From contig OZ004613.1 in assembly GCA_963924565.1 (NCBI GenBank), forward strand, positions 4,588,001 to 4,652,000: a DNA stretch of 64,000 bases, given 5' to 3'. The notes below the pieces were generated by a model. It saw nothing but the letters and a program-made list of their open reading frames with translations, was not told where the DNA came from and made no database searches. This DNA is from Ascidiella aspersa. Taxonomy: Eukaryota. This document shows, piece by piece, positions 5,601 to 64,000 of the stretch (its first letter is position 1; the number at the start of each line of letters is the position of its first letter). The position numbers and the translations under genes were made by a program.

Positions 5601-8600
5601 CTAAAGTCAAGTCAAGGACTTAAGTCATTACAACCCTGTCCACTGCGGTCGGAAAACCAAGTAAATCTACATACTACATTATTCTTATACAGGTCGACAT
5701 GGATGAGAATGGAAAGATTGACTTCAACGAGTTTATCATCATGATTGGATAGTGAGTTGAAAATTGTTTTGTTTTTTAGCTCAGTTCCACCCGCAAATTA
5801 TGGAAATAATATGGGCTTTACAAGCATCCTGAAGTATTTACATTTTTCGTCACTCGCCAGAGTATTTCAAAACGCGAAATTTTCTGTCTAAACTTTTTCA
5901 TCCCATTATTACATTTGGGTAAACAAAATTTACTCCAAAATTTAATGAATTGTAAACTAAGTTAATGTCTTTCCCAAAAACCAAAACATATTTAAAACCA
6001 AATATTTTTCGATTTTTCTTGTAATAATAAACCTTTTTTTTAAACAAAACTGCGCAACAGTAGGAATATTAATTTCATCTATATGAATATATCTGTCGCG
6101 TACCTATGGGACTCGTTTTATAAGACCTGCAGAGTATTAATTTCACGCTTTTAAACGCCTTGCCTTTAAAAGGATGACAAACGAGCAATAACGACTATCG
6201 ATGTGACCGCAGGGAACAGGTAAATTGCCGATACAATGTTGCGGCTATAAAACTACCAGCGCCAAAGTCAACATTCCAAGGGACAAATTATCCCCTAATT
6301 CCAATCTTCTAAGTAGGCTTAGCGGGAACCTTAAAGGCTTAGCTTGAAGCGACGGGGGAGTTTTGTAAGCTGTAACCTGAAGGGCATAGGACGAAGAAAC
6401 GCGGTTTCAATTGGGAAACTTGATCGCTATTCATCAGCTTAGGATTTAATAAAGACGAATGGTTATAGGAAGCTCATTTAGTAGAGTGCTTGAGCCAGGG
6501 AACGTGAGACGAAACTCACCTGTGGGGGAGAATGCTTAGGCGTAAATCTACTAGCCACGCTGTTCTCAAACTGAGAAAGTTTCCAAGGGTTCGCAGAGAA
6601 TCTTTTAATAAAGAATATCTAAATTGATTTGGTCTCATTATAATGTTAATGATTTACATTTCTCGTACAGTTTTTTTTTATATTTTATCTTGGTTATGTT
6701 TTTTTTTCACCAGTCCAGCCCACCATCTCTTTAAACGTATTAGGATTTCAGTTTGCGTATTGGTGAACTGAATGGAGCGATAACCTTAGTTTTCCTACGG
6801 TCACTTGTATTACGTAACTTGGTCGGTAAAAAAAATCCGTCTACTTTTCGGTAAAAATCATTTTAGATTCGAAATCATTCTACTTTTAGGTAAAAATTCG
6901 TTCTACTTAAACCTCTGATATCAAGTGATTCAAAGTTCTTCTAATCAAAACCCTCCCAAAGGATCCTCACATCCATTTAAAACAAAGCGACAAAAACAAA
7001 AATATGTCCGTCCTTGAAATGCCTCCTTCTCGCAAGTCCATTACAGCAGCGCAAACTTTTGCAGCCGAGGGTGCTTTCCCGCCCACCTTTGGCCGGTGTT
7101 GCTTGCGGTGCAGACAGTTATTATTGTATCAAATATTCATTCCTGGGACGCAACCTTCCGCCAAAAGGAAAGGATCAATAATTCATAAGCCGGGAAAGTC
7201 TTTACCGTTTGTTTTGTTTACAGCCCCTGAGTTTTCCAGATCGGAGGAAAATTACTTTCCCGGTGTTGGCGCCAACTTCTCGAGTGCAATAAAGTCCCCG
7301 GGGTTTAGGGCGCCGCTATTAAGGGGCGATTAGGGGGCTAGACTCCCCCATGTCAGACTTGGAAAACTAGACAATTTTAGTTTGGTACACTATGCACGGA
7401 TCTCTAATGTCTTAATCAAGATGCTGTCGATTTACTCGACCTTTTTGGCTTTGCAATTCATTATCTAGATAATTTTTGTTTTCTAATTCTATGAATTATA
7501 GCAAAATGCGACTAATTCTAGTTCTAATCTAATTTGGGTTTTACCAAAAATGATATTTTGTCCAATGGCATTTTTTATTCTGTCTGTCAAAACAAAGAAC
7601 TTCATTTAAAATGTAGTTAATTTTACATTCAGCAACTGCTAAACAGTATAGAAGTTGGGACTAACATATTTACAACATTCTTTTTAGAATAATTTGTGGT
7701 TTAAATTAAATTGATTGTAAACAATTATATGTAATTCCAGTTAAAATTCTAGGCAAAATTTGTCTTTTTAGAAATTCGGTTCCAATTCTTATCTAATTTG
7801 ATAAAACTTAAATATTCCAATTCTAATTCCAATTTTAATTTATAAAAGCCAACATAAAATATAGTTGTCTACGTCTGCCCCCCTAAAATTGCTCTTCCGG
7901 CAATTATTTTTTTATTAAATATACCGCCGTTTCGTTATCATTTCCCTGATGAATATTCCCTGCATAGGTTATCGAAACGTCATATATTAATTAAAAATGA
8001 ATTGCCGAAAGGACAGTTTTACAGTTGATGCACTGCCTGGCTGCGACAGGGTGTTTATTCGTTTACCAACTATGATATTTTAGAAATAACGATTTCACAG
8101 AACTTTTTTTTCGGATTTTTGCCTTTTTTACCGTAACATGAAAAGATGGTTGATAAAAAGTTAAATCTAAACCGTTACGGTTAACGTATAAAAGAACTGT
8201 TAATTGACCTGAAAATGTGTTAAAAGCTTGAGAAGCGCACCGCTCCGAACAAAAATCAGTCAGCAAAGTTCTAAAACTTTTAATACAAATATGCATTTCG
8301 CCATATAATTGGCATCATCAGTTTGTCTGTACAAATATATAGTAAAAAATTAAAATATTAAAATGTTAAATAAAACAAAATTATTAAAAATTTTAGAACT
8401 TTGATCGTCGGCATGATGTGTTCTGTTGAGGCAAGATTCTGTTGTGAATACACATACTAAGCTTATAGCATGTGTTAATTGGAATTTATTAAGTTGTTAA
8501 AATGTTATCCTCTTGAAGAATATTTTCAGTACGGTACCCTGAATATTGATCCGACAAGGCGTGAATATCTGACCTTTGAGAGAACCGTGACTAAAACCTT

Positions 8601-11222
8601 ATCTTCGTTTCGGATCTAAAGGCGCTAATTTTAGTGCCTAAACTTTTAAAAGACTGTTTTCACATCCCTTAGGGTTTACTCCCAAGAGATGGCGCGGTGT
8701 TCCAAAAAAGCAATCACTCATCCTTTAAATATAGTCGGGTGCGGCTTGAGTGTATGTGACTAACTTCGGTGTCGTTACATCGTCTTCTTTTCCTGTTAAT
8801 TTTGTCCTTTTTTCTTTTGTGCGTGTTTTGACGTTTTTATCTTCACTTGTATTTTCACACTGATTATGGCATGAGGTATTGCCGAAACGTTTGTAACAGC
8901 GAAATGTCGATTTTATCGAATAGGCCTATAATGACTTTAATATTTTTATTAAAATCGGTTTGTTGATTTGGCATTTTTTACTACAGGGGTGTCCAAACTA
9001 GGGCCCGCGTGGTAAATTTGACAGCCCTCGCATCCCTCGGAATTTCCCCTAGTGAGATAAAATATATTTGAAATGTTGTCGGATGCATTTACAAACTTAA
9101 GTTGTTTGATTTTTTTCAACGACAAATTCCCAAAAGCTTAGTAGCCTACAGTCTTTTGTAAAATAAAAGTTATAAACAGTTTTACTTTCTAAGAGTTATA
9201 AAAAACTACTACATATAAAAGCAATCGTTCGTAGTTTTTTTTTTATAATATTCTGCAACAAAACCTAATCAGGTCAAGTCAATATCGTTTTCTTTTTAAA
9301 AAAGTTTCCTAAATCATTATAACCACATGGAACAGAGGAGGGATGCTTAGTACTTAATGGATACTTAAAAAGTAACCTGATTCATTAAAACCTTGGAAGG
9401 GATTGTACAAATTCATTTCTTGGCAGTTTCGACAAGGCTAACAACGAAGACGAGGACTTATGCAACATCTTTCGGGTCTTCGATCGAGATGAAAAGGGAT
9501 CCATCGACGTCAACGACCTCCGCAACATCTGGAACGACTTCCTCACAGAGATGGCTCCCCTCGATGAGGTATCTTGCATTTACTTGGTTTAAATGTTACG
9601 CCAAAAATACTGTTCGTGCTTAACGGCCTGTCGCTGACCTCGTGTACGCACACAACTAAATTAGAGAACTTATTTATTGTAAACTTATATATTGTAGTGG
9701 CGCGAACGCCAACGATGGCTTTTTCTTGAGCGAATGCAGCTAGCGCGCACGCTACTAGCTTGATCCAAAAACGTGACCAACCCACACCACAACTAAAACA
9801 AGACTGCTTTCGTTCTCTCAAACGGTTTGCATCCAAAACGAAGGAATGTCCTTCTGGGCCAAAACAAAAGTGTAAAACAATGAGTGATTAGAAGTGAAAA
9901 CGCAAAGGTGTAACGGAAAGAAACGAACTGAGACAAAAAGTGAAGTGCAGTGAAGTAAATCAAATTAAACCAAGAAAATCAACAATAAATTACACAACAC
10001 AAATAGGCAAACAAACGCCTTTTTTTTGGAGGGGGGTCATACCAACGCTGCAAACCCCCTGGATCCGACCCTGGTTCCCAACCTTCCGAAGAGCTCACGT
10101 GATAAATTGCTGTGGCAATCGTCACATGGTCAGATTTATTGCTATTGCTTTGGTAAATCTTCCTACAAAATTTGAAAAAATCCAACAGCTATCGAAAGAC
10201 GAGGAGCATTTTAAATTAATTTGAATGCGCTAATGCTATTGTCCCATGGCAAACTGAATGTTTAAAATATGAAATATGTCTCCTCGCCCTTACACGATTT
10301 GCGATGAGCTTTTGTTACCAGGCGTAATACCAATCAAAAATGCGCCTTTTTCACCCGACCATTGTATATTCTTGCACAGAGCATAGAACACGGTTAAACA
10401 CTTCGAAATATGTAGACAAGGCATACTTGTTAAAAATCAGATAACTGAAAACAGGCCAGACAAAATTCCACGCGCCCGCGGCTGATTTTCCGTGTTGTTA
10501 AGTAGCAGTAACTCTACGTTGTTATCCTGATTTGGGAATATTTGATTGAAGAATTTACACTTGTAAAGTTGTAAGGCAACTTCACAATTATTTTAGAGCT
10601 TTCTTTGAAAAAGATTCCAACATTTTTTTGGATTCGCTTTTTGACCCGGCCCTCCCAAGAAATTTTGTTATTCGCGTGCAACCTCTTGTCAAAAAATGTC
10701 CACACATGCTATTGGGGAATTTTGTGTGACGCTAGTATTTGACTGACAATAAGTATAACCCCTAATTTTTTGTATTCAGGAATTTTCGCAGTTTTTATTA
10801 AAAAAGATTAAGATGTTGAAAAAAATAACCGTTTTTATTCCCAAACTTTCAAATTGGTACTTACTGATGTACGGGCTTTATATTTTACATCTTACTACAA
10901 TTTCCAGCCATTATCTTAGGATTGATTCAAAATATTTACAAAATGTTAGGCTACCTACTTCCGTCAGGGCTTTGACATTCAATCTACGTCTAACTATAAC
11001 CTCCAGAAATTATCCTGAGATTTATTCGAAAAGTTCACAAAATGTAACCTATACTTCTGCATGCGCCTTGATATTCATTCTATTGTAAAGTTCCACAAAC
11101 TGCTTCCCCCTTATACTCACGTGTTTATTTTCTAGTTCGAGGAAATGATCAAGTTTATCGACGACGATGGTAACGGGGAAATCAACCGAGTCGAGTTACT
11201 CGAGATGCTGAGTACGAGATGA
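2677..11222 (+). CDS. Calmodulin-like four-EF-hand protein; exons 2677-2757, 4540-4638, 5693-5751, 9427-9568, 11136-11222 (5' end unresolved)
   Basis: All exons have AG/GT boundaries and compatible phases (0,0,2,0). Spliced translation: GIFEDILCEMGEARIIQYKDAFAKFDKDSSGIISSKQLRRLLRTLGHNPSDIELRELVNQVDMDENGKIDFNEFIIMIGYFDKANNEDEDLCNIFRVFDRDEKGSIDVNDLRNIWNDFLTEMAPLDEFEEMIKFIDDDGNGEINRVELLEMLSTR*. It shows four EF-hand loops with calmodulin spacing and an LGxNP linker. The start is either the in-exon ATG at 2704 or an upstream exon. Confidence 0.9.
4654..5226. mobile_element. TAGGG-ended MITE with CCGATA/ATCGG subterminal motifs (host of a nested MITE)
   Basis: Imperfect TIRs TAGGGATTTCCGATA / TATCGACAACCCTA; 6/8 TSD. 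Related pieces at about 28690-28766, 31560-31851, 37025-37097. Confidence 0.6.
4727..4895. mobile_element. hAT-type MITE (169 bp) nested in the element above
   Basis: 15-bp TIRs with one mismatch, CAGTGGTGGAATTCA / TGAATCCCACCACTG; perfect 8-bp TSD GTTGTATC. Confidence 0.9.
7368..7871. mobile_element. AATTCTAATT-rich MITE-like repeat; second copy at about 54335-54816
   Basis: Two dispersed similar copies; imperfect TIRs TAGACAATT / AGTTGTCTA; interrupted by a hammerhead-family retroposon fragment at 7384-7464. Confidence 0.55.
8285..8326 (-). ncRNA. Minimal Type I hammerhead ribozyme
   Basis: Minus strand ACAAA CUGAUGA U GCCA auuaua UGGC GAAA ugca UA UUUGU: intact core, paired stems I and II, palindromic stem III (AUGCAU). 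Confidence 0.8.
8854..8896 (+). ncRNA. Degenerate hammerhead (core CUGAUUA), same repeat family as 61021-61064
   Basis: About 8835-8955 aligns by eye with about 61003-61118; stem II GGCA/UGCC, GAAACGUU; G8 changed to U. Confidence 0.6.
9693..9999 (+). mobile_element. Possible solo LTR
   Basis: Begins TGTAGTG, ends CACAACA, with AATAAA just before the 3' end and an A-rich 3' half; no convincing TSD. Confidence 0.3.
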
Positions 11223-11229
11223 TACAGAG

Positions 11230-12141: not shown

Positions 12142-15100
12142 TGTTAGACCAAACAGATATGAATTTTATTTTTATAAAACTTCTGACATCCCGACATGGT
12201 TGCACTTCTAAATAACATTCTACATTTTTTATATTTGTTTAATTCGAAGTTTACCAGACATAGATTGCATTTGGTAAAAGTATTGCTGTGTTCTTGGCCA
12301 TAACTGAATTAGCCTAATAACATGACTTCAAAGACTTGCAATATAGTTAATGGACAGTATTCCAAATATTTCGTTTATCTATCGCTGCATTTACCAGTGA
12401 ACACATTTCTACTATTTTACCTTTAATGAATTCAGTACCTCTAATTTGAAATTTTGCAAACAATACGTTCAGTGCATAATACTTGATCAAAGTACGCCTG
12501 TTGGTTGTACACTTGGTCAGAGTAGATTGACATGTCATACACTTGGTCAGAGTGAAATACCATAAAATGCCCTTTTGCCTAATCCTTTAAACCTGACTGT
12601 GTTTTCATTGACTTTTCTTCTTCTATTGTACTTTACCAAATGTTGCATGTTCCAGTTGTTTCCGAATATGATTGTCGTTACTTTTCGTGTAACCATTCCC
12701 GACAAATAAAGATCCTTTTTCCTGCTGAAAAATAGAGTCTTTTTGAGATCAAAAAATGGTATTTTTGCCACATTGGCTACTTTTACTTTCACATCTATAT
12801 AGCTAGTCGTAAATTGATATTAATGGCAAGACTTTGGTACGCTATGAAGAATCTGTAATGTAGCTTGGTAATGAATTGCAAAGCTAAAAAGGTCGAGTAG
12901 ATCGACACCAATTTGATTAAGACGTTAAGAAGAGATTATAACTTCTATCGAAAAAAATGTTATTTTAAAATTTGCTGTAGGCCTACTGCAATCGGAAGTT
13001 TAAATAATATGAAATAATTTTAAAAACAAATGTACAATATTAATATTAAAACAAATGTACAAGGTGCTAAATAATGTTTCAGTATTTATTGTCACCTACA
13101 GCGGCGACAAGCCGTTCGACGCAAGCGGTGTTTTCTTGAAATTTTAAATTGTTTTTGAAAAAATCTATGATATTGACAAATAGAACATAAATAAAAGGTG
13201 ACTGCAAAAACGTTTTACCTTTTTTTTCTTTTTTTGATACAGGAAAGTGTTTGCATAGTAAACATTTAAACTTTAACCTTGTGTAAAAAAAGATTCATCG
13301 ATAAATAAAATCTACATAGCTCACTTACGCCACCTTACAGTTAAACAATCTTTGCCTTTTTGTTTGCCAAGTTTGACTAATAGTGGCTGATTATATCGCT
13401 GTAGCTTAAAGTTAAAGGTCACAGTTAGCAGTGACAGGGGTCGGCAACCTACGGCTCGAAGTCTGACAATGCAAATTATCCGGCGCGCCGCCTCTTAATG
13501 GGCATAAGTTCCTATATTTTTGGCTATTTTAAATAAACTTGTAGCTGTTGTGTGGACTCAAATTTTTAAACAAACAAATGCGTTTTATTCGAGCTTCGCG
13601 CAAACTTACCTAGCATACAATTAGACACATTTTTAAATGCAAAAAGTCTGATATGCCAACTTAAAACATATGTTTCAATTGAATCCTAAAATTGCATTTT
13701 AACTTAACTACAAAAAATTATAATTTTAAATTTATTATGGCTGGCCGAGGCCTCTCTGAGAATGGAAAATGGCTTTGGCCCGCGACATTACCGCGGGTGG
13801 GAAAATGTTACCGCCCCTGTTGATAATATCAATAGGCCTATCTATATACCCGGTAGGCCTACTTGAAATTTGCAGCAATAGAAAAACATCAAAAACGTTT
13901 GTTAAGCTATTTAGCATTAGAAATAAAATTGTTCTAAACGCCCTATCATACAATACATACTCTTTGGTAGATTCATTTGAAATTGTATTATTTTGTCTAA
14001 ACTTTAAACGTCACCCAAAGAGATTGAAACCAAAGTCTCTTTGCGTCACCTTACTGGTTTAGTAGCTTATTGGGGTAAGTCCCAGTTGTCTTTTTTCGTG
14101 ATGTTCCAAAAAAAAACCAAGGCGAGGAAGTTTTACGTTTTGTTTGCACTTCTGGCTCGCCACCCGGCGCCAGGTTTTATCTTGCAGATGGATTTATTGC
14201 GTTGTTGCAGCGTTGACAGGTTGCGTTGCCGTTTTTGTGGCAATAGATCAGCAGGTGTTCATAATTCCTGAAGTAACTGTTTAATCAAGTTTTTTGTTTT
14301 GTTCTGTTGTTCTAAGTTTGCGGCCTTTTTTAAAATTAAATTTATGCAATGCGTTTAACTTGCTATTGGAGTTAATGGCGTTTATTTTAATATGTTGTAG
14401 AAAGTTAAAACGATTTTAAGCACTTGGTTTAGTTAAGTTTTTCTGTTATTTGGTTCTGTAACAAAGCTTCAAAAACTCAATCAGTTCGTAATGCAAAGCA
14501 GCTTTCAGCAGTTTACAAAAATCCTTTCAATTTACAAAAATGCAGCAGTGTGAAAAATTAACTGTGAACAATTCAGTCAAGAAAGTATGACATGTGTTGA
14601 CCCACATTGGAAACTTTTACATAATTTGTGGCCACCAAGGATTTACGCCCTAATTTTGTCGGCTGAATTCCCACACCCAAATCTACAGTTTTTGTGGTAA
14701 ATTTACTGGTCGTATTTTACGGCGAAAATGTGGTCAAATTCTAGTCCAGCTTAAAAATACCTTAAAAAAATCAGATTGACTTTGTGCACTTAAAGTCAAA
14801 AGTGCATGGATATCCTGCTTGTTAAACATGTGGAATAATTGAGTACCATTTCGATTTTTTTCTCTTATCAGAAAATTTGTAATGATATATCTGTATACAT
14901 TGGAAAAACTAGCCTCGTACCCAGTTTGTATTATGTGGCAAGCTTACACCGGAGATTTGTTGCAAAGCAAATTGTGTACAAACCTGAATTAGTATATTTC
15001 CCACCTAAATTTGAAAAAAAGTCTAGCTGGTGGGATTCCTATTATAAGGTGTACATGAGACCTTAATAAAAAATAAATTAGCAAGGCGTTTTTTTGTTCT

Positions 15101-15202: not shown

Positions 15203-18200
15203 ATGGCTCTAATGATAACAATGACAGGGGGTTCCCCTTGGGGTTTTAAGATGAAGGGTGGAAAGGATTTTCATCAACCACTCGCAGTCGCCAAGGTATG
15301 GCTAGTCAATTGATGAGATATTAACAGTATACCTTTGTTTTGATTAAACTTTCTTGTAACACATTTGAAACAACTGTGGAAACATAAATTACTCTATTTT
15401 TCGTTAAAAGTTTATATGTATATTTTCTATAAAATTTTAAAGAAATGTTGTTTTTTTTTGTTGGTTTTTTACATTTTTAGCCTTTGAAATTCCTTGCACA
15501 AAAAATATAAACAACCAATAGATATAAATTTGGCCATTTTTTAAATATTTGTGAAATATCATTAAATCAATTTATTGTTTATCAAAATTAAAAAACAAAT
15601 TTATCATTCAATAATTCGGGTTTAATGCGCCTTAATACAGTAAGTCCTATCGATCAGTTTACACTTCTAATTTGTTCATAATGAAACATACACATACAAT
15701 CATATATACTCTCAACTTTACGAGGTTTTCTGGCACGCAACAGTCATGCCTTGGGGGGGAATTATCCAGCCCTTTTAGAAAAAGTTTTGTGACCTCTAGT
15801 GTAATTTGCATCCTCAGGTGACGGCAGGAGGAAAAGCTTCGAGGTCCGGAGTTGTTGAGCGCTACGTGATCGAAAAAGTTAACGGGGAAGATTTCTCCAA
15901 CCTCGGCCACCACGAGGCTCAGAACAAGATTAAGAACGCAGGCTCGACCTTAGTTCTGCATTTGAGGTGAATTTGATTAACTTAGCTAATTTGTGAGAAT
16001 ACTGGTTCGATGTTGTAGTAAGACATAGTAGAAATATTAAAGAAAGTAACTGAAACATTCGTCTACAAAATGTGTATTCTGTAATCAAGCCATTCTGGAG
16101 TCCTTACTGGAAATGCAGATGTTAAAAATGAATAAAGTTATTTGAAATATTCAAAGTGCTACCTATCTTCAGTATGGGCTTGATAAGTCTTTACTTTGTT
16201 GTTGTTACAAACAACATATACACATTGTACAATCTGTTACAAATATGTAGTTAGAATATCAAAGCCTTTCAACGAAAATGAATAAAGTGATATTTGAAAT
16301 GTTCAAAATGCTACCTACTTCTATATGGGTTTTGATATTCTTACTACATACATCTTAAATTTATTTCTTTTTAATATTTATGAATTTAGTTCTTATTAAT
16401 ATTTATAACTTTGCAATATTTCATGGAAAATATTTTCAATCTGTATCACCAACATGTTAATTTCAATTTTGTATTTGCATGAATGGCAAAAAAAAGGTAT
16501 TAATTGAATAACAGTATGTAAATAATTTATATATGTAAATAATTTAATGCTTAGTTTTTCTGCTAATAGCTGTGAACTTAGTATAGCATTGTGATATTGC
16601 TGAAATTTGCATCTTCTCGAACTATAGGGTGATACTTTCAGGTATAATATTTTGTAATGTATATTTGTGCAAAGTAACTTTATTTACAGGTAAAAGTTTT
16701 ATTCAACTACAAAATCAACCAAAAAAAAGTATATAATAAACAGTGTAAGACAAAAATCTCTTCCCATTGAAATGAATTAACCACTTACTCAAATTACTCA
16801 TCTGTTATATTTGAGTGTCCACCAAATGAGGTGTGACTTACACCAGGTCATGGCTGTTTAAATAGTAGGTGTAATCAACACTATTCATTCAATCAGTGTG
16901 TAGAAGAGAGAGAGTGGTACTTAGCTGCCGGCCAGACACAAGCTCAAGTTTGCTTTAGGCACTTTGCAGAGCTCCTTATATGGGCAACAGCAATCTGTTG
17001 TAATTTTCTCCTGATTTCTCATAACAGCCAGTTCGTGCTGGTATTAGTTACGCTGCGCGGTAATCCAGGCCAATATGGCAATTCGGCTGCTTGCATTTCC
17101 TGTGTATACGTCACTTCAAGCCACCGTGTCATTTCTGCCCAATCCCCTTTAAAAGTTTGTTTTGATCACTTCTGCATGTTTGCAAAACGTGCCTCTTGTT
17201 TCTCCCACATTAATTAAATTGAAACACTCTGTTCATCAGCTGTAGCAAATAAATTTCCAACTAGAAAAATGTATACAAATTTGGAAGCAAATGTTAGTTT
17301 TAATTAAAAAAATATTTTTATTGGAATTACTAAAAAAAAACTGTGTATTGTGTTCCAAAATGCTGTCTTATAAGAAAAAAAAAAACTCCTAAAAAGTTAC
17401 TTTTCTGCATATTATAATGTCAATTTTTGTAACAGTGCTTTCATAAACATGTTTTCGTTTCATTTTTTCCATTTTAATGTTTCGTTTATGTTTCTAGTAA
17501 ACCGAAGCCAGCGGGTGCACCACCTGTAGCAAACACAGCGTATATTGATACAACTCCTAAAGTCAGGTACTTATTTTATGTTAACATATTAGTATAAATT
17601 TCTTTCGAGCATAATGGCTTGAGGTTGTGGTTGGACGCCAGTCTGCATTCTGTGGCAAGTGCACACCTGATATTTGTTTTTTAAAGAAATTTGTGTGCTA
17701 ACCCAAATTACACGCCTAGAAATTTCGGGCTGCACACCCGAGATCTTGCCATGCCATGAAATGCAGACTGCGTTGGATTTAGAATTAATATACACAAAGC
17801 TTGGCCATGTTAAATGTGAAATAAGATTCATTCAAAAGGTTCAAAATATGTTACTAACTTCTGTATGAGCTTTGCTAATTGACTTGTTTTACGTAAAGCT
17901 CTTTGAGTTTTTATGCTGTTAGTGAACTTCATAAACACATATAGTTGACTTATCTGTTTTTTCAATGCAAATTGTTTGTGAGTTGTTGTGGTGCATTTGA
18001 AGTTCAAATAGTTTAAAATAATATATTAGCAATTGGATATCATTTTGACAATACTCAAAACTTTAAAATTTGTTTAAAATTCTTATCCCGTTACATCTAA
18101 CAAAATTAAACCTTAACACCAAAAACATTTTAAGATTAAAAAACATGTATTTGTTTTAACACTGCAGAGTTTAGCATCTTAAAATCAAGCAAAAAGTTAA

Positions 18201-42040: not shown

Positions 42041-43519
42041 AATAAAAACAAGTTAGAACATAATCTGTTATGTTTTCCAATACAACCAGCCTAATCAGGT
42101 GCTAATGACTAATCGTGCTTTAATATTGACAAGATTTAGCGTTTCTGCATCACTTTTTGAATATCCTGTTGTATAACACCACTATAAAATTCCCGCTACA
42201 GAGACCTTGGGTTAACTAAACACAATAATCTGGTCTCAATGCTTTAAGACGCTTGGTACGTTCTTAAAACCACATGGCATCGTCAAACGTTGGTATTGTG
42301 CCGGTAAGCCTAAGCTTCTAAATGACGTTGTAGCCTATGAAGTCGTATCGTCTATAGTGGTGTTAAATGACGTTATATAATCCAGTTAGGCATTTTATGA
42401 CGTCAAATGATCCACTGGGCCATTTAATGACGTCATATTACCCAGGATGACCTATTTTATAAAGTCAACAAACCAACAGGCAAACTCGTAACGAAACCAA
42501 ACTAGACTAGGAAGAAAACGGTGCCGGCCTTGGTCGAACGGCCTCGAAATGTGGCCGAGTAAGTGTGATGTTGAAGGGCGTTAACCGACAGCTGGCCCTG
42601 TGCTGTCAGTCTCATGCCAGAGAGAAGCTGTGAGTTTACAAACAAGTTGAAAGCCGCCACAACATCGCCTTTGATCCCCGCGAGCAGTTTGAAGCTCCGA
42701 GTTTAAAGACCTCACTTCTGCGAACCAGCAGCGGCAGTGGTAAACCGCAATGCTGAATGTCGTCGCTTCATCGACCTGTAGGCGCTACATTTTATTTTCA
42801 TCTTGGCTTGGCGGGAGGCGTAGCGTCTAAAAGTAAAACGAGCAATTTCTTTAACACTTTTGCGTCGCATTTATGGCAAATTGTCCAGTTGTTTTTCCTA
42901 CAACATTGGTATTTATCCATCTAAGTACTACGCAATCTCGAGGTCGTTTTACTATTTCGCCTTGTGATAGATTGTTTAATATTTAAGTGTGCACTGTAAA
43001 AAGTTAATACCTTTATTCTTGTGCCTCTATTGGATTGAGTTGACCTTAAAATAATATGAAGAACGAACATGTGGAACAAGATATATTTTTTGATGTTGAA
43101 AATGAATAAAGACTTATTCGAAACGTTCAAAATGATACCTACTCCTGTATGGCCTTTGATATTCTTATTACGTCTTACTACAACCTCCAACCATTATGCT
43201 CCAAAATATTAACAGCAAATTCATCATTATACTAATTATATATCATAAATGATACTAAATTAACAATGTGTATTGTTTTTTGTATGTTAATTGAGTATTA
43301 AAAACGATTTTATAATTTACTTAAAAAATTTGTACTGCTGGTAAAAGTAAGCCGAACTTCGGTAAAGAACTTTTGCAGGTACGTTGTGCCGGTAAAAAAC
43401 GTTCTGTTTTACCAGGTCATCCTGTCATCCACTTTAATGTGTTTAAACTAAAATAGTAGCATATTTGGGCACTACATCGAACAAAAGCCCCAGGTTTAGT
43501 ACGATAACTTGTTTTAGAC

Positions 43520-47000: not shown

Positions 47001-48823
47001 CGGAAGATGAAAGAAGTTCTTCTGGCGAAAGTAACTCGACTCAGCTAATCTCATTAGTTCTAATCCGACCCCAGTTCTGCGCGTGCCACCGCGCCTTTGT
47101 TCTCAGCCAGCCATGCGTGACGCAAAGAAATACCCCCTGGCGCCCCCTAATTAGCTCTGTTTGTTGCCCCCTCCCCCCTACCTACAACTTTTTACCCCCT
47201 CTCTCGTTTGCGGTTTGCTAGTTGGCGCAGGGCGAAAGTCTGTTTGTTTTCCGGAGAGCTTACGTTTGTTTGCTACACAAGGCGATATCCCGGTGGCTTC
47301 GATCTGCTGAGGAAGTCAAGTTTGGCGAAAGACGTGAAACGCTCGCTGAAAATGAGTTTTAACCTCGCACGAAAACACTGCTTTTCTGCAAAATTCAGCC
47401 AATATTTTTGCTTAAACTTAAAATGATATATAGGGCGGTTAAATACTTTCTGATGTCAAAAATATTGCAATTCGGCTAAATGGGTAAAAATCTATTAAGT
47501 GATATTTCAGAAAACTCTAATTCACTCTGCAACACCCGCCACATTTTTTGGTGATCTTTTTCTACAATCACCGAAGCACAGGATCATACAACGTTTAAGA
47601 AATTTATATATGCCATCAGTTTTTGCATCGATGAGTAAGTGTAAGCATGATAACATTCATTTTTAAACATAATCAGTATGTTTAGAAATGATTGAAGAGT
47701 TAAGAGTCTACACTTGTTGTTTAGATCAAAGCAAACGTGAGTTATATAAGACTTGGTCTTACGCTTAAGCCTAGTAAGGACGCAAAATCGTTTCATGTTG
47801 TTATTTGTTTCTATAGGCTGATGTTAAACTTCCACTAATTTGAAATCTGTAACGCAGCTTGAAAATGAATCTCAAAGTCAAAAAGGACGAGTAGATCGAC
47901 ACCGTCAAGTGATAATGATGCAAGTATGTATTAAAACGTCTTTATCAAGATAATGTCGATTTACTTGACGTATTTGACTTTGAGATTCATTATCAAGCTG
48001 CATCATTTTTAGGGTTTTAATGAATTTTTGACTACAGCTTTTGTAAAACTGTAGACTTCGAATAAATTCCTCGATATCAACATCTTGTTTTTCGAAGCCG
48101 TCGTTGTTATTGCTAAAGTGGAGAAATCAGGCGGCACTGTTGAAAGAAAAATTCTAATGAATTTCGATTCAATACAATTGGTCTTTCACAGTGCCACCTA
48201 ATTCCTGTAGTTGAAAAATTAGACAAATACGGCTTTTGACAACGATTACTACAGTGGAATTTAAACATATTGGTTACGGTTACTTAATAGCAAAAGTACC
48301 TTCAATGTTTAAGACCCCTTAACAATCAGGAAGCCGATCCTACCCCATTGTTTTGTTTTGTAACCAAGTTCGCAGAACCTGTTGTGGTGAGGCCACAAGT
48401 ATGTGTGCTATACTTCCAAGAAAACAGCAAACTTCTGGATACGGCCAACTGGACTCTACAAAAAGTAACCTTCACAAACGTGACGTTGTTGATCGATGAC
48501 ATGCACAAATATGAAACTAAAAGCTTAGTTTAAATGCATTTAAGGGGATAGCTGAATACAGCCTTGTAAAAAAAAACATATACGGGTTAATTTTTTTTAC
48601 AGATACGGCGTAAATTTTTTAAGGTACCTATGCGGTGAATTTTTTGGAGCGGTAATTTCTGTTTACCTTAGTAGAATAATTTTTTTAGCGAAACGCATGG
48701 TAATCTTCAGAGATGACGTCACAATATTAAGTTATGATAGATTTTTAAAACAAGTAACCCAATAGGACACCTGAGCTTATCGTTCGATGTTGTTTACAAA
48801 TATGCGAATGAAATCTAAAATAC

Positions 48824-48976
48824 GTAATAAGAATATCAAAGCCCATACAGAAGTAGGAACATCTGATGTTGAAAATGAATAAAGACTTATTCGAAACGTT
48901 CAAAATGATACCTACTTCTGTATGGGCTTTGATATTCTTATTACGTCTTACTACAACCTCCAACCATTATGCTCCA
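48824..48976 (+). mobile_element. Short Penelope-like retroposon with hammerhead-like motif and 5'-inverted arm
   Basis: 13-bp TSD AAATCTAAAATAC (48811-48823, 48977-48989). Inverted arm 48822-48857 pairs with 48911-48946. Relatives at about 10930-11085, 16060-16345, 30530-30780, 43091-43207, 59672-59885, 63275-63349. Confidence 0.72.
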
Positions 48977-57644: not shown

Positions 57645-60003
57645 CTGTAAAGAAGACGTAGGGTTAGTTTCGTTGGCTTGTTGGAGCTTTTAGAAATGGT
57701 GAAAGTAAGCCGAGACCGTAAAAAACGCCTCTGGTAAAATAATTGCTGACGGAATTTCAGTCAAAATAATTAAAGGTTTGCCATACCGGTAAAAATGTTT
57801 TTTACCAGGCCCTTTTTCTTTTATACCAGGCAATCCCGCCACCTCTTTAAATGTATTTAAAGTCTAAACTAACCTATCAGTTGCATTTTTGTGTAATAGA
57901 TTGAATGATAATCTCAAGTTTCGTTTTAGACGTCTATTTATCACGTCATTGTGTGACGTCTTCTTAAAAACAGGTTTTTGTTTTGCTGTTTTTTATGTTT
58001 GGTTTCACATTCTGAATGAAACCTGTCTTGTTTACATCTTAAAGTAGACGTTCCCGTTTTTACGACTCCACCAAATCTCTTCATAGAGTCTGACAGGTAC
58101 TTTTCGCTGGCGGAATTGTTACAAAACAACACACGAACGCTTTCGATTCGAAACTTTCAGCGAGGCCCTTACATTTGACCTTCAAACGTCCTTCAGTCTT
58201 GGCCGCCGTTGGCCCAAGAAACTTGAAGCGTCTAATTACCTCAACCTCAAACCGTTTCGTGTTTACCTCTAAAATTGGTAAACAGCGAGATTTACTTTTT
58301 CTTTCGATTTGGGTCAACTGTTATAGGTGGCTGACAAAAAGTGGCATTTTTAGGAAAAACGAATTAAATAAATCCGCAATCTATTATTATAGGAAATTTA
58401 AAACCACTAAGATTGGATATCCTCGTACAAAACAAGAGTCTATTTTAACGTTCTGGTTTTATATGCCTATATGTGTTTTTTATAAATTTTAGTGAAGTCA
58501 AAACGGTCTCATTAAACTTTCAGTTGTAAAGCCGTACTCTGAAAATATCTGTAAGAGGAGAAAAACACCAAAGTCCATAAGTTACCATTGTGCGAACGTT
58601 CCAATAAAACAATCGTTATTATCGACGTCATAGAGGTTGAAGTTTGCAGTTTGAAATTGGATAAACAACAGGGTCTATACAGAATTTTACAAACACTTCT
58701 AAATAATGTTTACATTTTTGTAGCTTTAAACCGTTCACATAACGTTACTGGTTAAATTTCGAAAAAATAATATGTGTTCGCTGTCTCGCAAAACCCGTTT
58801 TATTGCGCGAGGGTTAAGTGGCGGTTGTGAGGAAATTCAACTCGAAGCGTCCTGTGTTTAGAGCGGTAGAGCTTCTGCTGTGTAAACTCTCCCGAATTTC
58901 CTCCCGCTACTGGAAGTTCCCCGTTCTACGAGTCTGCGGCCAAAACTTCGCCAAAGCCCACAAAACAAATTATTCGGTTGTTTTGGCGATGTGGAAGAGT
59001 TTCAAATAAACGCAAAACCTCCGTGTTTTGATTGGTCATTGCATCATTCTAAAAAAACGGTAAAACTACGAGTTCCATGTCAATGCTTCAGTCTGCACAT
59101 TGGGAGTTTAAAGCCTATTACCGCCATAACAAAACTTGTACCATTATTGCATTTCCACTGCTTGTATCCTTCCCTTTTATTTAGTGAAATGTAGCCGCAT
59201 TAGAATACATTTTGTCTTTTTATGAGCAGTAATAAATTACTCGTGTAAAAAATCATACTCAGCTTGGACCACAAATGTTGCATTGTAATATCAATACGCT
59301 ACGTTTTCTCACAATTGCGAAATAGTTTTATCTATTTCAATACAGCCTCGGGCAAAACGAGAAACTGTCTTAACTCGCTCAAAAACATCTTTCAAAGCCA
59401 CGAGACAAAATGTCCACCGAGTTCAGCCGAATTATCTCGACGGCGCAGCTTGATTACTCAAGGCCAAACTTCGATTGCGCAATGACAGGTGACCATCCAC
59501 GCCATTTTGTTTTATGAGCCTGGCTTTCCGGTGTCAGTGATAAGGCCTTCCTGTCCTAACAAGCAAGCGGATACAAACTTGTCAAGGTATCAAACTTAAT
59601 CAGTGAACCCGTGGCCTTACTTTTATGAGAACCAGCTAAACCCGTGGTATGCGACTTTAAATAAACTTTGAAGCATAGTGGTTGGAGGTTGTTGTAAGAC
59701 GTAATAAGAATATTAAAGCCCATACAGAAGTAGGTATCATTTTGAACGTTTCGAATAATTTTTTATTTATTTTAAACATGGTTGGAAAACAAAAAGAAAA
59801 CAGAGATATTCGAAACGTTCAAAATGCTACCTTTTTCTTTATGGGCTTTTCTCATTACGCTTTAATATAACTCCCAACTATTGATGCACTGTAAATGGGC
59901 CTAAAAAGGTGACTTTATAAATATTTTCGCCCCTTTCCCAAATACAGCAAAATAATCTAGCAAAACTAGCAATTCAGGTCAGACACATTAGCCAGATCTC
60001 AAA

Positions 60004-60047
60004 AGATATATATATATTTCACCAACTAAGGCATCGTCAGTATATCT
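60004..60047 (-). ncRNA. Minimal Type I hammerhead ribozyme (inverted arm)
   Basis: Minus strand AGAUAUA CUGACGA U GCC uuaguu GGU GAAA uaua UA UAUAUCU; 7-bp stem I. Confidence 0.8.
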
Positions 60048-60126
60048 GTAACTATTATTTTATTTTGTTTTATTTAATCTTTAATGTTTCTGACTCATTC
60101 TTATACTGTTGCGTTTGTTTTTATTC

Positions 60127-60170
60127 AGATATACTGACGATGCCTTAGTTGGCGAAATATATATACATCT
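60127..60170 (+). ncRNA. Minimal Type I hammerhead ribozyme (direct arm)
   Basis: AGAUAUA CUGACGA U GCC uuaguu GGC GAAA uaua UA UACAUCU; one stem I mismatch; predicted cleavage after 60163. Confidence 0.78.
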
Positions 60171-61020
60171 TTTAAGATCTGGTTAATGTGTCTGACCTGA
60201 ATTGCTAGCTTTGCTAGATTATTTTGCTGTTACTGATCAGGAATTAAGGTCGACATTTATCTTGCAAGGGTCAAGGTGATTTCCATTTTTAACATATTCA
60301 GTGCAACCTTTCCCAAATAGGTACGGTTAGAACGGAGGCGTTGTTGGATAACTAAAGGCAATAGCTTTGCATATTACGATTTGTTTTGAAAAGTGCTTTA
60401 AAAGCGTTGCTGCATTTCATTGAGTACAATAATGTTTGCACTGCTCACGTTTTCTTGTGAAACAACTTTTCCGCGATTTTTTCACCTGGCTGATTCGCAG
60501 GGGTGTTACCTTATTTGTTACGTAATGTGGGTGACAATTGTCCTGTCACCCCGCCGCCCCTATGTTTGTCCACGTCGTACCACAGCGATCACGGTGCTTT
60601 GATATTGCGTCTTAGCTGTGACGTCACACTGATCTAAATGGGCGACTGGGCGTGTCGCAAGAATGGGGGTCGTAGGACGAAGGATTTCCTTGCTTCAGTT
60701 GCAAAATGGCCGGCTGAAAACAACCTGACTTTGGCAACAAGGTTTAAAGGCAACGTTTCTTTGAACGTTGTTGTTTGTTGTTGAGCAAAGATAACAGAGC
60801 AAGGCAAACAGGCCTCGGGTTTGTCGGAAAACACGACTTAGCCTCCCTAACAGCGCTTTTTGTGTCTTATCGCGTCCATCGCTGAGGTCCTTGACTTTTC
60901 CTGCATGTTCGCGCTTTGCATACTACTTTCGTGGAATTCGTGTTGAACGTGCCCTTGAAACAAGATCTCTGTCTGTTTTCTTTTCTTTTATGTTTTATCG
61001 CTATGATCTTCACTTGGATT

Positions 61021-61064
61021 TTTACACTGATGATGGCATGAGTTATTGCTGAAACGTCTGTAAA
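61021..61064 (+). ncRNA. Minimal Type I hammerhead ribozyme
   Basis: UUUACA CUGAUGA U GGCA ugaguuau UGCU GAAAC GUC UGUAAA: 6-bp stem I, GUC triplet (cleavage after 61058), palindromic ACGU stem III. Confidence 0.82.
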
Positions 61065-62078
61065 CTGCGAAATGTCGATGTTATCGAATATTATGGCTTT
61101 CATATTTTTATTGAAATTACTAAAAAAACGTCTATTGTCTTCCAAAGATCTGTGGGTTTCGTGAGTTCTTCCAACGCGTACAGATTTATTGGATTATATA
61201 AGCTTTAAAAAATAAAAATATCTTAGAGAGACAAGCTTAGTTTTGTTTCGAAAACAATAATGGGATCACAATGAAAATTCCCACAAGAGCCAATTCTTAC
61301 AGATTTATTGGATTGCATAAGTTTTATTTAATAAACAATCACTTCTTAGAATGCCTGTGATTTTTGTACAGTCCTTTCTATCTGTTTTAAACCAACTTGA
61401 AAATATCTCGAAAATGCAAAGCAGCTGTACACAGTTACGTAGAAATGTTTAAGTATTTAATCAATATTTAACCTTTTTTACTTCTCTGCAGGTTTTTTTT
61501 TTTTAAGGTTTGGTTTGGGTGAACGCTAAGTAGTTTTAAGAGACCGCAAGTGTTTCATTTAAATACCAAAAAGTTGCAAGTCCAAATTTGGGAAACCGCT
61601 GGAGAAATTTGGGGGACCGTTTCGGTCCTCCAAAACACCTTAAAAAAACACTGCTTCCCCATAGCAAAAATGGCAAAACTGTCAAACGCAAAGCAATAAA
61701 ACGCTTTCCAGATGCGTTCATCAAAGCCAACTCATCATTTCGGGGAAACTCGCTTCTTATCACGCATCAGAACATCGAAATCGGTTCAGGGCAGCGGAAT
61801 GTTAAACGCCGAACCCGGGTCAGGGCAGGGGAAGGTATGTTGATGCGTCAATCAGCGGCATTTAATTCGGAAGAGCCGCGCGACGCCGTTTGTCAAAATC
61901 GCGCCATAACGCGATCGGAAATCGTCGGTCCGCGAAAAGAGCTTTTTCCTGTTCGCAGCGATGACAAATTGGAGACAGGAATGACAATTGGTCGCCGCTT
62001 TTCTTTTTTCGGGGGAAGGGGGTGCGTTATTTAAACGTATCGTGACGTCACGCCTTTGCTTACGCGTTGACAAGTGCT

Positions 62079-62977: not shown

Positions 62978-64000
62978 GTCACCGTTTTCCCCACCCTCTC
63001 ATACAGTCACGATTCCAGTTAAGAGGTTAAACAAGCCCTATCTTCAGTACACGGAAAAACGCCATAAAGACCGGCGGCAAATCCCTTTGTGGTTTCGACA
63101 GTTCGAAAAAACCCGCAGATTTGCGTAAACATAGGTCATAATATTTAAATAAATATTAAATCAAGTTTAAAGTCATTTTTCCCATAAACTGTTTAGAGTG
63201 GTAAGAATAGCAAAGCCCAAACAGAAGTTTTCGATTTCACCATCGAAAATCAATAAAGAGATCTGCGAAAATTCCATATGATACCTATTTTTGTATGGGC
63301 TTGGCATTCTTAATACGTCAAACTACAACCTCCAACCATTATGCTCCAACGGTTAAAACACCATTTTTGTTTTCATAACCTGCCCAGATAAAATGATGCT
63401 GTTTGGTCGTTTTTTGGATTTGTGGTCACGCTTTTACCAAAGACACTTTGTTTTTTGAACTTCAATATTGGAGACTGGGCCTAAAACTTTTTGGAAACTG
63501 GGGCTAAAAAGGTAAAAATGTACCCGCTCAAAAATACAGCGGTTTTAAGAGTCGGTCACCGCTATATCCACGGGTGGAAATTTCCCGGCCAATATGTGCG
63601 AGAATTCTCGGGGAGGCGGCACTTAAGATGCGACGTGAAAACAAACACAGCAATCGACAGGCGGCGGCGTCTAGCCAGGAGTATTTTGGCCAGGTCAAAC
63701 GGCCGACACCATGAAGCCCGACACCATTTTTTTAAACTTAACAAAACAAAAATGGTCTAAACACATAAGAACTCAATAAATCCATGGCAACTGATTAAAA
63801 GGCAAAACCTGTCCAAAATCGTTAGTTGGCCAGTTTTAATTGTTGTTATTTAACAGTTTGTATTCTCAGTTAGAACTTAAGAAAACAAATCGATTAGTAA
63901 CTTTTTCACAAAAGGCCACAATACTCGACAGAAAGATGAAATCAGCACCAAAACCTTCCGAAAAAAACCCGCTTTAAGATAGCGGCCGCGAAATTTGGCC

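What the first reader, a model, noticed from the sequence alone, without database searches (positions are those of the whole stretch)
7384..63349. Several unrelated repeat families share one design: minimal hammerhead, short tail, 5' inversion, 12-13 bp TSD
Seen: three inserts with unrelated sequence (33539-33695, 48824-48976, 59945-60306) all show TSD - inverted copy of an internal segment - direct arm beginning near a hammerhead motif - TSD. Each has 1-2 nt of microhomology at the inversion junction. Further inverted pairs lie at 7384, 22012, 30530, 36631, 47845 and 59672. Stem I differs between motifs but stays paired (ACAAA/UUUGU, AGGAA/UUCCU, AGAUAUA/UAUAUCU, UUUACA/UGUAAA, AUUAA/UUAAU), and stem III is always palindromic (AUGCAU, AUAUAU, ACGU). 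Roughly 20 family fragments in 64 kb imply very high genomic copy numbers. Inference: a diverse ribozyme-based retroposon system integrating by TPRT with second-strand (twin) priming. It would be easily misannotated as MITE-like because of the inverted repeats.
Basis: partly seen in the sequence, partly recalled or inferred. Interest (0 to 1): 0.8.

Follow-up and report, generated by a model that had tools for sequence, protein, structure and literature searches.

The report
Short end-pieces of Penelope-like retrotransposons
The window is peppered with about 30 very short terminal copies of Penelope-like retrotransposons, each carrying the small hammerhead motif, flipped 5' copy, one-sided tail and short target duplication already described for this class, so it is real but ordinary.

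Summary
Three inserts have exact 12-13 bp target-site duplications (TSDs), an inverted internal piece and a direct arm. Six minimal hammerheads occur against 0.43 expected, and about 30 related loci lie in the 64 kb.

The families are not an unknown system. They are terminal repeats (pLTRs) of Penelope-like elements (PLEs) from this genome.
- The family A unit sits 90 nt after the stop of a GIY-YIG endonuclease ORF.
- Window 8221-8467, 30260-30427 and 48171-48251 match the ends of elements with endonuclease ORFs (reverse transcriptase also found in two of the three families).
- Family D lies 75 nt after an endonuclease match, in a family with open frames up to 880 aa.
- A, B and D are collinear and share the ORF start, so they are not unrelated.

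Across 60 genomic copies the inverted arm has variable inner ends. Its outer end is fixed and stops 29-31 nt (76 nt in C) short of the 3' end. That is the published PLE "tail", and it fits priming on both strands from two start sites. Unit ends do not coincide with the ribozyme cleavage site, and RNA reads show no pile-up there.

All these features are published (Cervera 2014; Arkhipova 2013; Craig 2021; Frangieh 2024). First-stage readers of this scan noted the same swarm on other pieces of this genome. Masters for B and C were not located. Interest is low.

The parts
7385..7471 (-). Family A (PLE pLTR) copy of the non-duplicative type: inverted body (unit positions about 38-100) joined to the direct 28-nt tail (100-125). 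Flanked by a 12-bp TSD with 1 mismatch at 7367-7378 and 7465-7476.
8221..8467 (+). Terminal piece of the ATGCAT-type PLE (92% to L080-L084). Inverted arm 8221-8379 equals element positions 2310 down to 2154, and includes the hammerhead at 8285-8326(-). Direct arm 8381-8467 equals positions 2308-2397. 9-bp TSD at 8215-8223 and 8470-8478.
8824..8955 (+). Family D-like pLTR fragment (82%).
10812..11076 (+). Three old family B-like fragments (76-81%).
12837..12926 (-). Family A fragment, unit positions 35-125 (88%).
15995..16347 (.). Family B-like fragments, including the inverted pair 16244-16350.
22024..22261 (+). Old family A-like inverted plus direct pair.
30260..30427 (.). Head-to-head pair of the ATATAT-type PLE terminus (about 80% to L079), with a hammerhead at 30316-30355(-).
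30575..30711 (+). Family B-like inverted arm (30575-30622) plus direct arm (30627-30711).
32761..32882 (-). 5'-truncated family C copy (unit positions 131-252, 96%). Exact 14-bp TSD at 32746-32759 and 32887-32900.
33539..33695 (+). Family A insertion. Inverted arm 33537-33562 (unit positions 97-72), 5-nt join, full 128-nt unit 33568-33695 with the hammerhead at 33571-33612 (core mutated to UUGAAGA). 12-bp TSD.
36627..36825 (-). Family A pair. The tail-bearing arm is 36627-36733 (unit positions 16-122). The tail-less arm is 36732-36825 (positions 1-98).
43091..43203 (+). Family B complete 113-nt unit without an inverted arm (97%).
47845..48003 (.). Old family A-like inverted pair.
48121..48251 (.). 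Small head-to-head fragment of the AGCT-type PLE terminus (80-86% to L068-L076).
48824..48976 (+). Family B insertion. Inverted arm is unit positions 86-48, then the palindromic join AACATC/t/GATGTT, then the full 113-nt unit 48864-48976 (U3/A8 core variant). 13-bp TSD.
59669..59887 (.). Two family B and B-like copies head to head (93% and 78%).
59945..60306 (+). Family C insertion. Inverted arm 59944-60048, direct 252-nt unit 60055-60306 with a 76-nt tail. Hammerheads at 60004-60047(-) and 60129-60164(+). 13-bp TSD.
60990..61146 (+). Family D pLTR with the hammerhead at 61021-61064. Elsewhere in the genome this unit sits 75 nt after a PLE endonuclease domain.
63202..63348 (+). Family B copy with a short inverted arm (63202-63228) and a direct arm (63245-63348, 85%).

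Best explanation
WHAT IT IS. The repeats are pLTR-only retrocopies of several Penelope-like element (PLE) lineages. A copy is 113-252 nt long. It holds the minimal, dimer-type hammerhead, then the start codon and the first 20-25 codons of the PLE ORF, then a 3' tail.

HOW IT INSERTS (inferred). The PLE reverse transcriptase / GIY-YIG endonuclease makes staggered cuts that end up as a 9-14 bp target duplication. The bottom strand primes cDNA at the very 3' end of the RNA. The top strand primes at a second, internal site about 30 nt upstream (76 nt in family C), helped by 1-5 nt of microhomology with the target. This produces an inverted arm that always lacks the tail. The two cDNAs are then joined by template switching or self-priming, which leaves a short palindrome at the junction and variable inner breakpoints.

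THE 5' END (inferred, for family A). The discrete 5' end of the short unit lies 3 nt after a TTATAAG...TCAGT (TATA-like plus initiator-like) motif in the long copies. The short units are therefore probably cDNAs of transcripts that start at a pLTR promoter and are reverse-transcribed from the first start site reached.

THE HAMMERHEAD. It is a conserved passenger in this leader. It does not define the element's ends.
For: SHOWN.
1. Long family A copies are 5'-truncated at different points (about 300, 420 and 708 nt). They run upstream into an ORF with a GIY-YIG / CCHH region that stops 90 nt before the A unit.
2. The genome has at least 151 matches to that domain (the best 150 of 673 first-look candidates were scored), in several families with open frames of 816-880 aa.
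3. L067 has RVT_1 and GIY-YIG in one ORF. Loci with GIY-YIG carry the same minimal hammerheads 185-385 nt after the stop (measured in L067 and L081), often on both strands.
4. Window 8221-8467, 30260-30427 and 48171-48251 match those PLE ends. Family D lies 75 nt after an endonuclease match.
5. A, B and D are collinear and share an ATG plus a hydrophobic reading frame that stays open to the 3' end. The window holds no reverse transcriptase or endonuclease coding pieces, only pLTR parts.
6. In 60 genomic loci the inverted arm's inner ends vary: unit positions 1-72 in A and 26-54 in B. The outer ends cluster at a median of 97 of 128 in A, 84 of 113 in B, 181.5 of 258 in C (query coordinates), and 125-140 of 157 in D.
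7. Exact TSDs of 9-14 bp occur in 20 of 30 B copies, against a control maximum of 7. In 18 of the 19 B copies tallied for this the left TSD overlaps the inverted arm by 1-5 nt (mean 2.5).
8. Two window copies are inversions without duplication, broken exactly at the tail boundary.
9. The junctions are palindromic.

LITERATURE. The same architecture is published.
- Inverted pLTR shorter by a 31-bp tail, palindromes at the junction, solo pLTRs, TATA plus Inr in the pLTR (PMC3846280).
- Inverted 5'-truncated copy and a 30-40 bp tail (PMC8557442).
- Both strands cleaved and extended, with two reverse-transcription start sites that bound the tail (PMC11167929).
Against:
- The priming order, the two start sites and the promoter-defined 5' end are inferred from footprints, not observed.
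- The duplicative copies need two templates or a template switch. The self-priming hairpin model of Arkhipova 2013 explains the palindromes equally well.
- The internal deletion seen only in B's inverted arms (about positions 10-45) is unexplained.
- RNA reads cover the elements on both strands, but 98% run on into unrelated flanks and no discrete ends were seen. There is therefore no evidence for a discrete short RNA.
Confidence: 0.88

Rival explanations
1. The inverted arm is made by self-priming, not by top-strand (twin) priming. The first-strand cDNA (or an antisense template) folds back at the RNA's 5' end and copies itself. The product is then captured by the upstream target end.
For: In most B copies the junction is a 3-11 nt palindrome with a 0-3 nt loop placed exactly at the unit's 5' end. 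Arkhipova et al. 2013 read such palindromes as self-priming. This model also explains why the direct arm is always full length while the inverted arm duplicates it.
Against: A hairpin always duplicates sequence. It cannot give the two non-duplicative inversions broken at the tail boundary (7385-7471 and 8221-8467). It does not by itself explain why the outer end is fixed about 30 nt from the 3' end. PAc extends both strands in vitro. Both routes may operate.
Confidence: 0.3
2. The families are free-standing non-LTR retrozymes. They would be non-autonomous elements that spread through hammerhead-processed, circularised RNA, not truncated or solo PLE pLTRs.
For: There are thousands of short copies with hammerheads. 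Animal retrozymes have been related to PLE pLTRs. No coding master was found for B or C.
Against: - The copies are dispersed single units, not head-to-tail tandems.
- Unit ends lie at position 1 and at the tail, not at the cleavage site (A about position 38).
- The hammerheads are the minimal type, without loop-loop contacts.
- The most abundant family (B) has only 2 bp of helix I.
- RNA reads show no ends or back-joins at the cleavage sites.
- Family A runs directly into a PLE ORF.
Confidence: 0.06
3. They are MITE-like or foldback DNA transposons, recognised by their inverted repeats.
For: Inverted repeats of 26-105 nt flanked by direct repeats.
Against: - The right end carries a non-inverted tail of 29-76 nt.
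- The inverted arm's inner ends differ between copies.
- Some copies have a TSD but no inverted arm (L029, L049).
- TSD length varies from 9 to 14 bp.
- Long copies are 5'-truncated and continue into a PLE endonuclease ORF.
Confidence: 0.01
4. They are SINEs mobilised by a LINE, with L1-style twin priming.
For: TSDs of 11-14 bp and 5' inversions are also typical of L1-mediated insertions.
Against: There is no poly(A) or simple-repeat 3' end. The 3' ends are shared with PLEs that have GIY-YIG endonuclease ORFs, not with LINEs. Most inversions duplicate sequence, unlike L1 twin priming.
Confidence: 0.02

Closest known systems
Endonuclease-containing Penelope-like elements and their pseudo-LTRs, for example Pen2a_Av of Adineta vaga (Arkhipova, Yushenova & Rodriguez 2013, PMC3846280; Craig et al. 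2021, PMC8557442)
   Same: - A terminal repeat that includes the ORF start.
[quoted passage not shown]
- A tail of about 31 bp at one end only.
- A palindrome at the inverted junction.
- A short TSD, 5' truncation and solo pLTRs.
- A TATA plus initiator motif in the pLTR.
   Different: Almost all copies here are pLTR-only (113-252 nt). They reach thousands of copies per family. TSDs are somewhat longer (9-14 against 8-10 bp). Family C has a 76-nt tail.
Minimal hammerhead ribozymes of PLE pLTRs (Cervera & de la Pena 2014, PMC4209133)
   Same: - CUGANGA / GAAA core.
[quoted passage not shown]
- A G10.1-C11.1 closing pair.
- A helix III reduced to a 4-6 nt palindrome, implying dimer activity.
- A U3-A8 variant.
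- Compensatory variation between families.
- Thousands of single motifs, and pairs on opposite strands.
   Different: Nothing essential differs. Self-cleavage was not tested here.
PAc (Poseidon of Anolis carolinensis) in vitro mechanism (Frangieh et al. 2024, PMC11167929)
   Same: The genomic footprints fit its findings. Both strands are primed. There are two reverse-transcription start sites whose spacing equals the tail. The 3' end lies about 100 nt into the ORF. Hammerhead cleavage is not needed, and RNA-seq shows no ends at the cleavage site.
   Different: Here everything is inferred from insertions in another animal. No biochemistry was done.
Animal non-LTR retrozymes (Cervera & de la Pena 2020, PMC7229834; Li, Clavereau & Pollet 2026, bioRxiv 10.64898/2026.07.22.740005)
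   Same: Short, non-coding repeats that carry a hammerhead and are related to PLE pLTRs.
   Different: Retrozymes are tandem arrays with canonical type I hammerheads and circular RNA. These are dispersed single units with minimal hammerheads, and their ends are not at the cleavage site.
L1 twin priming (my own knowledge of the L1 literature, not read here)
   Same: The second-strand 3' end primes internally on the RNA through microhomology and gives a 5' inversion. Two window copies are exactly of this non-duplicative kind.
   Different: Most copies duplicate the inverted segment, and the internal priming site is fixed. In L1 the site is variable.

Membership tests
Penelope-like element (EN+) terminal repeat | Full-length relatives encode a reverse transcriptase followed by a C-terminal GIY-YIG endonuclease. 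| tested here: met
   L067 has RVT_1 and GIY-YIG in one 488-aa frame. L081 has them in adjacent frames. The family A upstream ORF aligns to the GIY-YIG core, and its atlas neighbours carry GIY-YIG / HTH_animal. Family D is adjacent to an endonuclease match in a family with 848-880 aa open frames. Not located for B and C.
Penelope-like element (EN+) terminal repeat | An inverted, truncated copy adjoins the 5' end and forms inverted repeats. | tested here: met
   Found in 29 of 30 B loci, 13 of 30 A loci, 10 of 40 C hits, and at least 13 pairs in the window.
Penelope-like element (EN+) terminal repeat | A 30-40 bp tail is present at only one end of the insertion. | tested here: met
   The tail-less inverted arm stops 31 nt (A), 29 nt (B) and 17-32 nt (D) from the 3' end. 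It stops 76 nt short in C, which is longer than published.
Penelope-like element (EN+) terminal repeat | The pLTR contains the ORF start and a hammerhead motif. | tested here: met
   In A, B and D an ATG after the hammerhead opens a frame that runs to the 3' end. Window 8389-8467 matches the N-terminal frame of the ATGCAT-type ORF. Hammerheads are shown.
Penelope-like element (EN+) terminal repeat | Short TSDs of variable length, and variable 5' truncation. | tested here: met
   TSDs of 9-14 bp. Long A copies are truncated at about 300, 420 and 708 nt. A C copy is truncated at position 131.
Minimal hammerhead ribozyme (PLE type) | Conserved core CUGANGA ... GAAA with a non-G base at position 17. 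| tested here: met
   Six window sites and all PLE loci. The window's A copy has C3 changed to U, while other A copies read CUGAAGA.
Minimal hammerhead ribozyme (PLE type) | Helices I and II stay paired through compensatory changes. There is an unpaired nucleotide between 9 and 10.1. Helix III is palindromic. | tested here: met
   Across 7 motif types, every helix I and II position tallied (5 in helix I, 3 in helix II) shows 2-4 pair types. All have an extra U or A after A9. Helix III is always a 4-6 nt palindrome. Caveat: the motif finder required pairing, so the shuffle test is the unbiased control.
Minimal hammerhead ribozyme (PLE type) | Self-cleavage at position 17. | tested here: inconclusive
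   RNA-seq shows no pile-up of read ends at the predicted sites. That library would lose short RNAs, and PLE minimal hammerheads cleave poorly even in vitro.
Animal non-LTR retrozyme | Head-to-tail tandem monomers with one canonical type I hammerhead each. Unit-length linear and circular RNA bounded by the cleavage site. | tested here: not met
   The units are dispersed singles with TSDs. Their ends lie at position 1 and at the tail, not at the cleavage site. The hammerheads are minimal. Reads show no back-joins.
MITE / foldback DNA transposon | Terminal inverted repeats at both ends and a TSD of fixed length. | tested here: not met
   The right end carries a non-inverted tail. The arm breakpoints vary. 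TSDs are 9-14 bp. Some copies lack any inverted arm.

The most novel reading that the evidence does not exclude
The thousands of pLTR-only copies may form a distinct, SINE-like product class of PLEs. Under this reading, transcripts start at a pLTR initiator and are reverse-transcribed from the first start site reached. Their footprints would then give in vivo, genome-wide support for the mechanism so far seen only in vitro for one lizard element, namely priming on both strands from two start sites. The footprints are a fixed tail boundary, microhomology between the inverted arm and the TSD, pure inversions, and palindromic joins. The arm-specific internal deletion in family B would point to an extra template-switch step that has not been described.
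Probability: 0.3. Interest if true: 0.45.

Novelty: new member of a known kind. Interest (0 to 1): 0.22.

Why it matters
For annotation: these inverted-repeat mini-elements should be labelled as PLE pLTR fragments. They are not MITEs, microRNA hairpins (Rfam gave only weak miRNA look-alikes) or a new class of ribozyme retroposon.

For mechanism: the genome offers thousands of young, short, easily aligned insertions. They could be used to map PLE reverse-transcription start sites, second-strand priming and junction resolution statistically. That would complement the single in vitro study available. It does not open a new question.

Tried and rejected
- Rfam at gathering and at E up to 10 found no hammerhead family, only weak miRNA-like hairpins over the inverted repeats. 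Minimal hammerheads lack helix III, so I used a motif parse with a shuffle control instead.
- The MAFFT alignment of the hammerheads came out of register and included one wrong-strand row. I replaced it with a structure-based table. No covariance model was built.
- Within-family conservation of core against flank was uninformative. All positions are 90% or more conserved in young copies.
- Pfam alone did not recognise the family A endonuclease ORF. It was placed by pairwise alignment to Pfam-positive PLE endonucleases and by atlas neighbours.
- RNA reads gave no discrete 5' ends, no cleavage-site ends and no circular joins.
- MITE, LINE-dependent SINE and retrozyme readings were considered and rejected (see the rival explanations).
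- The organism is only given in coded form ('organism A'), so I made no comparison with Repbase or Dfam.
I sent read laying 1901 letters.
Full report
SETTING. The window is part of chromosome-scale contig C7 of a 308.6-Mb animal genome. It is 64% A+T and contains no N. The organism is given only as 'organism A'.

OBSERVATION: THE INSERTS.
- I read the three inserts directly. Each has an exact 12-13 bp TSD: 33527-33538 / 33696-33707, 48811-48823 / 48977-48989, and 59932-59944 / 60307-60319. Shifted-flank controls gave none.
- Each consists of an inverted copy of an internal segment, a few joining bases, and a direct arm that runs on past the repeat into a non-inverted tail.
- The repeat finder confirms these pairs and those near 7384, 22012, 30530, 36631, 47845 and 59672.

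OBSERVATION: THE HAMMERHEADS.
- A motif parse required a core, helix II, GAAA, a short closed helix III, a non-G base at position 17 and helix I.
- It finds six sites: 8285-8326(-), 30316-30355(-), 33571-33612(+), 60004-60047(-), 60129-60164(+) and 61021-61064(+).
- The expectation is 0.43 sites on average (maximum 3) in 200 first-order Markov random sequences made from the window.
- Rfam sees none of them, as expected for hammerheads whose helix III is only a 4-6 nt palindrome.

GENOME-WIDE ANATOMY: UNITS AND INVERTED ARMS.
- Searching the assembly with inserts A and B gave 2447 and 1135 first-look candidates. Families C and D gave 1343 and 870.
- In 60 fetched loci the direct arm is a unit with discrete ends: 128 nt in A and 113 nt in B. 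C has a 252-nt unit, and 29 of 40 hits start at the same base.
- The inverted arm differs from copy to copy. Its inner end ranges over unit positions 1-72 in A and 26-54 in B.
- Its outer end clusters at a median of 97 of 128 (A), 84 of 113 (B), 181.5 of 258 (C, query coordinates) and 125-140 of 157 (D).
- The inverted arm therefore always lacks the last 31, 29, 76 and 17-32 nt. The arms are made anew at each insertion. This excludes a MITE with fixed ends.

GENOME-WIDE ANATOMY: TSDS AND JUNCTIONS.
- Exact TSDs of 9-14 bp (mostly 10-14) flank 20 of 30 B copies, against a control maximum of 7.
- Copies without any inverted arm also have TSDs (L029, L049).
- In 18 of the 19 B copies tallied the left TSD overlaps the outer end of the inverted arm by 1-5 nt (mean 2.5; chance would give about 0.3). 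This is the footprint of microhomology where the upstream target end meets the element.
- The junction between the arms is usually a 3-11 nt palindrome with a 0-3 nt loop, sitting exactly on the unit's 5' end.
- In B this means the inverted arm carries an internal deletion of roughly positions 10-45 that the direct arm never has. I cannot explain this asymmetry.
- Two window copies are of a second kind. In 7385-7471 (A) and 8221-8467 the direct arm is only the tail and the inverted arm starts exactly where the tail begins. These are inversions without duplication.

IDENTITY: FAMILY A.
- Many family A hits continue upstream. The long copies are 5'-truncated at about 300, 420 and 708 nt. One of them is again preceded by an inverted, tail-less copy.
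- In L061 a 202-aa ORF ends 90 nt before the A unit. It contains ...VVYKLSCSCGASYIGQTRRNLLTRVKEH...CRHLLQNSDH....
- Pfam alone missed it. It aligns at the GIY-YIG core of Pfam-positive endonucleases from this genome. Its atlas neighbours are GIY-YIG / HTH_animal clusters (a lead only).
- That ORF has at least 151 matches in the genome (the best 150 of 673 first-look candidates were scored). Several families have open frames of 816-880 aa, some in tandem.

IDENTITY: THE OTHER FAMILIES.
- A Pfam GIY-YIG search found three further families. L067 has RVT_1 and GIY-YIG in one frame.
- The loci of these three families carry a minimal hammerhead (all except the short-match locus L074), 185-385 nt after the stop where measured (L067, L081), often also on the opposite strand nearby.
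- Two of these hammerheads are the ones in the window. Window 8221-8467 is 92% identical to the end of the ATGCAT-type element. Window 30260-30427 is 81% identical to the ATATAT-type. Window 48171-48251 is 80% identical to the AGCT-type.
- Family D lies 75 nt after an endonuclease match at C3:19496730-19497305.
- A, B and D align collinearly: helix I, core, helix II, GAAACGUY, ATG, then a hydrophobic frame open to the 3' end. The frames read MLSIYSTFLALQFIIKL..., MIPTSVWALIFLLRL... and MLSNIMAFIFLLKL....
- They are diverged homologues, not unrelated families. Each unit is a PLE pseudo-LTR that includes the ORF start.
- The window itself has no reverse transcriptase or endonuclease coding pieces, only about 30 pLTR-derived loci.

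THE HAMMERHEADS IN DETAIL.
- Across seven motif types the core is constant. A single unpaired U or A follows A9. Helix II closes with G-C or G-U.
- Every helix I and II position tallied (5 in helix I, 3 in helix II) shows 2-4 different pair types. Helix III is always self-complementary (ACGU, AGCU, AUGCAU or AUAUAU).
- These are the published hallmarks of PLE minimal hammerheads, including the U3-A8 core variant that B carries (PMC4209133). That paper also reports a 2-bp helix I in Drosophila virilis Penelope, so B's short helix I does not disqualify it.
- Unit ends do not coincide with the cleavage site. In A that site is at about position 38, inside the unit.
- The most abundant family, B, has the weakest motif.

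READS.
- One RNA run and one DNA run of the same species were laid on 59500-61400.
- DNA depth over the B, C and D segments is roughly 2700x, 600x and 340x the single-copy flanks.
- RNA reads fall only on the elements, on both strands. The RNA to DNA ratio is similar for all three, and 98% of reads run on into unrelated sequence. This looks like read-through of many embedded copies.
- No place shows many molecules beginning or ending, so there is no support for cleavage or for circles. The library would lose 113-128 nt RNAs, so this is weak negative evidence.

MECHANISM (INFERRED).
- The fixed tail boundary, the TSD microhomology and the pure inversions fit priming from both target strands. 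The bottom strand primes at the RNA's 3' end. The top strand primes at an internal site about 30 nt upstream.
- This matches the in vitro behaviour of the lizard element PAc, which cleaves and extends both strands and starts reverse transcription at two sites that bound the tail (PMC11167929).
- The palindromic junctions fit either end-to-end template switching between the two cDNAs or the self-priming proposed for rotifer Penelope (PMC3846280). I cannot separate these two.
- For A, the long copies carry TTATAAG, about 20 nt, then TCAGT immediately before the unit. Some short copies retain the GT or AGT of that motif.
- A TATA plus initiator arrangement is reported in rotifer pLTRs. I therefore think the short unit's 5' end is a transcription start. 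This is untested.

COMPARISON AND VERDICT.
- Every element of the 'shared design' is already described for Penelope-like elements: inverted pLTR, one-sided tail, short TSDs, solo pLTRs.
- Thousands of single minimal hammerheads, and pairs on opposite strands, have been interpreted as truncated PLEs.
- Retrozymes have been related to pLTRs.
The claim of a new ribozyme-based system of unrelated families is not.
- First-stage readers of this scan made 39 hammerhead-related notes on other pieces of this genome.
- What remains of some interest is the sheer dominance of pLTR-only copies and the clean statistical footprints they offer for the PLE mechanism.

Noticed in passing
genome places listed (for example C1:3358, C1:59050, C4:59076, C3:73111, C2:326565, C3:39430875, C2:39747124): More than half of the best family D hits (about 26 of 40) lie within roughly the first or last 1 Mb of chromosome-scale contigs. 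This suggests subtelomeric arrays of an endonuclease-containing PLE. Telomere association is otherwise known for endonuclease-deficient PLEs.
   Followed up: no
window 22860-24449 (-): An intronless 529-aa ORF with no Pfam match. Its protein-atlas neighbours are unnamed mollusc clusters and zf-CCHC / gag-like retrotransposon proteins. It is probably the gag of an LTR retrotransposon.
   Followed up: partly
L080-L082 (G000:C2:30627252-30640808) and C9:23488030-23493863: Head-to-tail PLE arrays with periods of 3422 bp and about 2671 bp. The second has repeated 816-aa open frames and is a possibly active master array.
   Followed up: no
L001-L030, inverted arms of family B: The inverted arm nearly always carries an internal deletion of about unit positions 10-45 (the hammerhead-like hairpin). 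The adjacent direct arm is intact. No model considered here explains this.
   Followed up: partly
L065 (G000:C35:38221-38427) and L066 (G000:C11:3588-3803): The two strongest GIY-YIG matches lie on small unplaced contigs and have no hammerhead nearby. They may be another element type or foreign DNA.
   Followed up: no
window 30577-30673 and 59721-59843: The PLE inverted pairs give weak Rfam hits to plant and animal microRNA precursor models (E 0.02-0.8, far below the gathering scores). This is a likely source of false miRNA annotations.
   Followed up: yes
L021 (G000:C2:34865743-34868887): A compound array of five or more family B units in alternating orientation, which shows nested or concatenated insertion events.
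   Followed up: no
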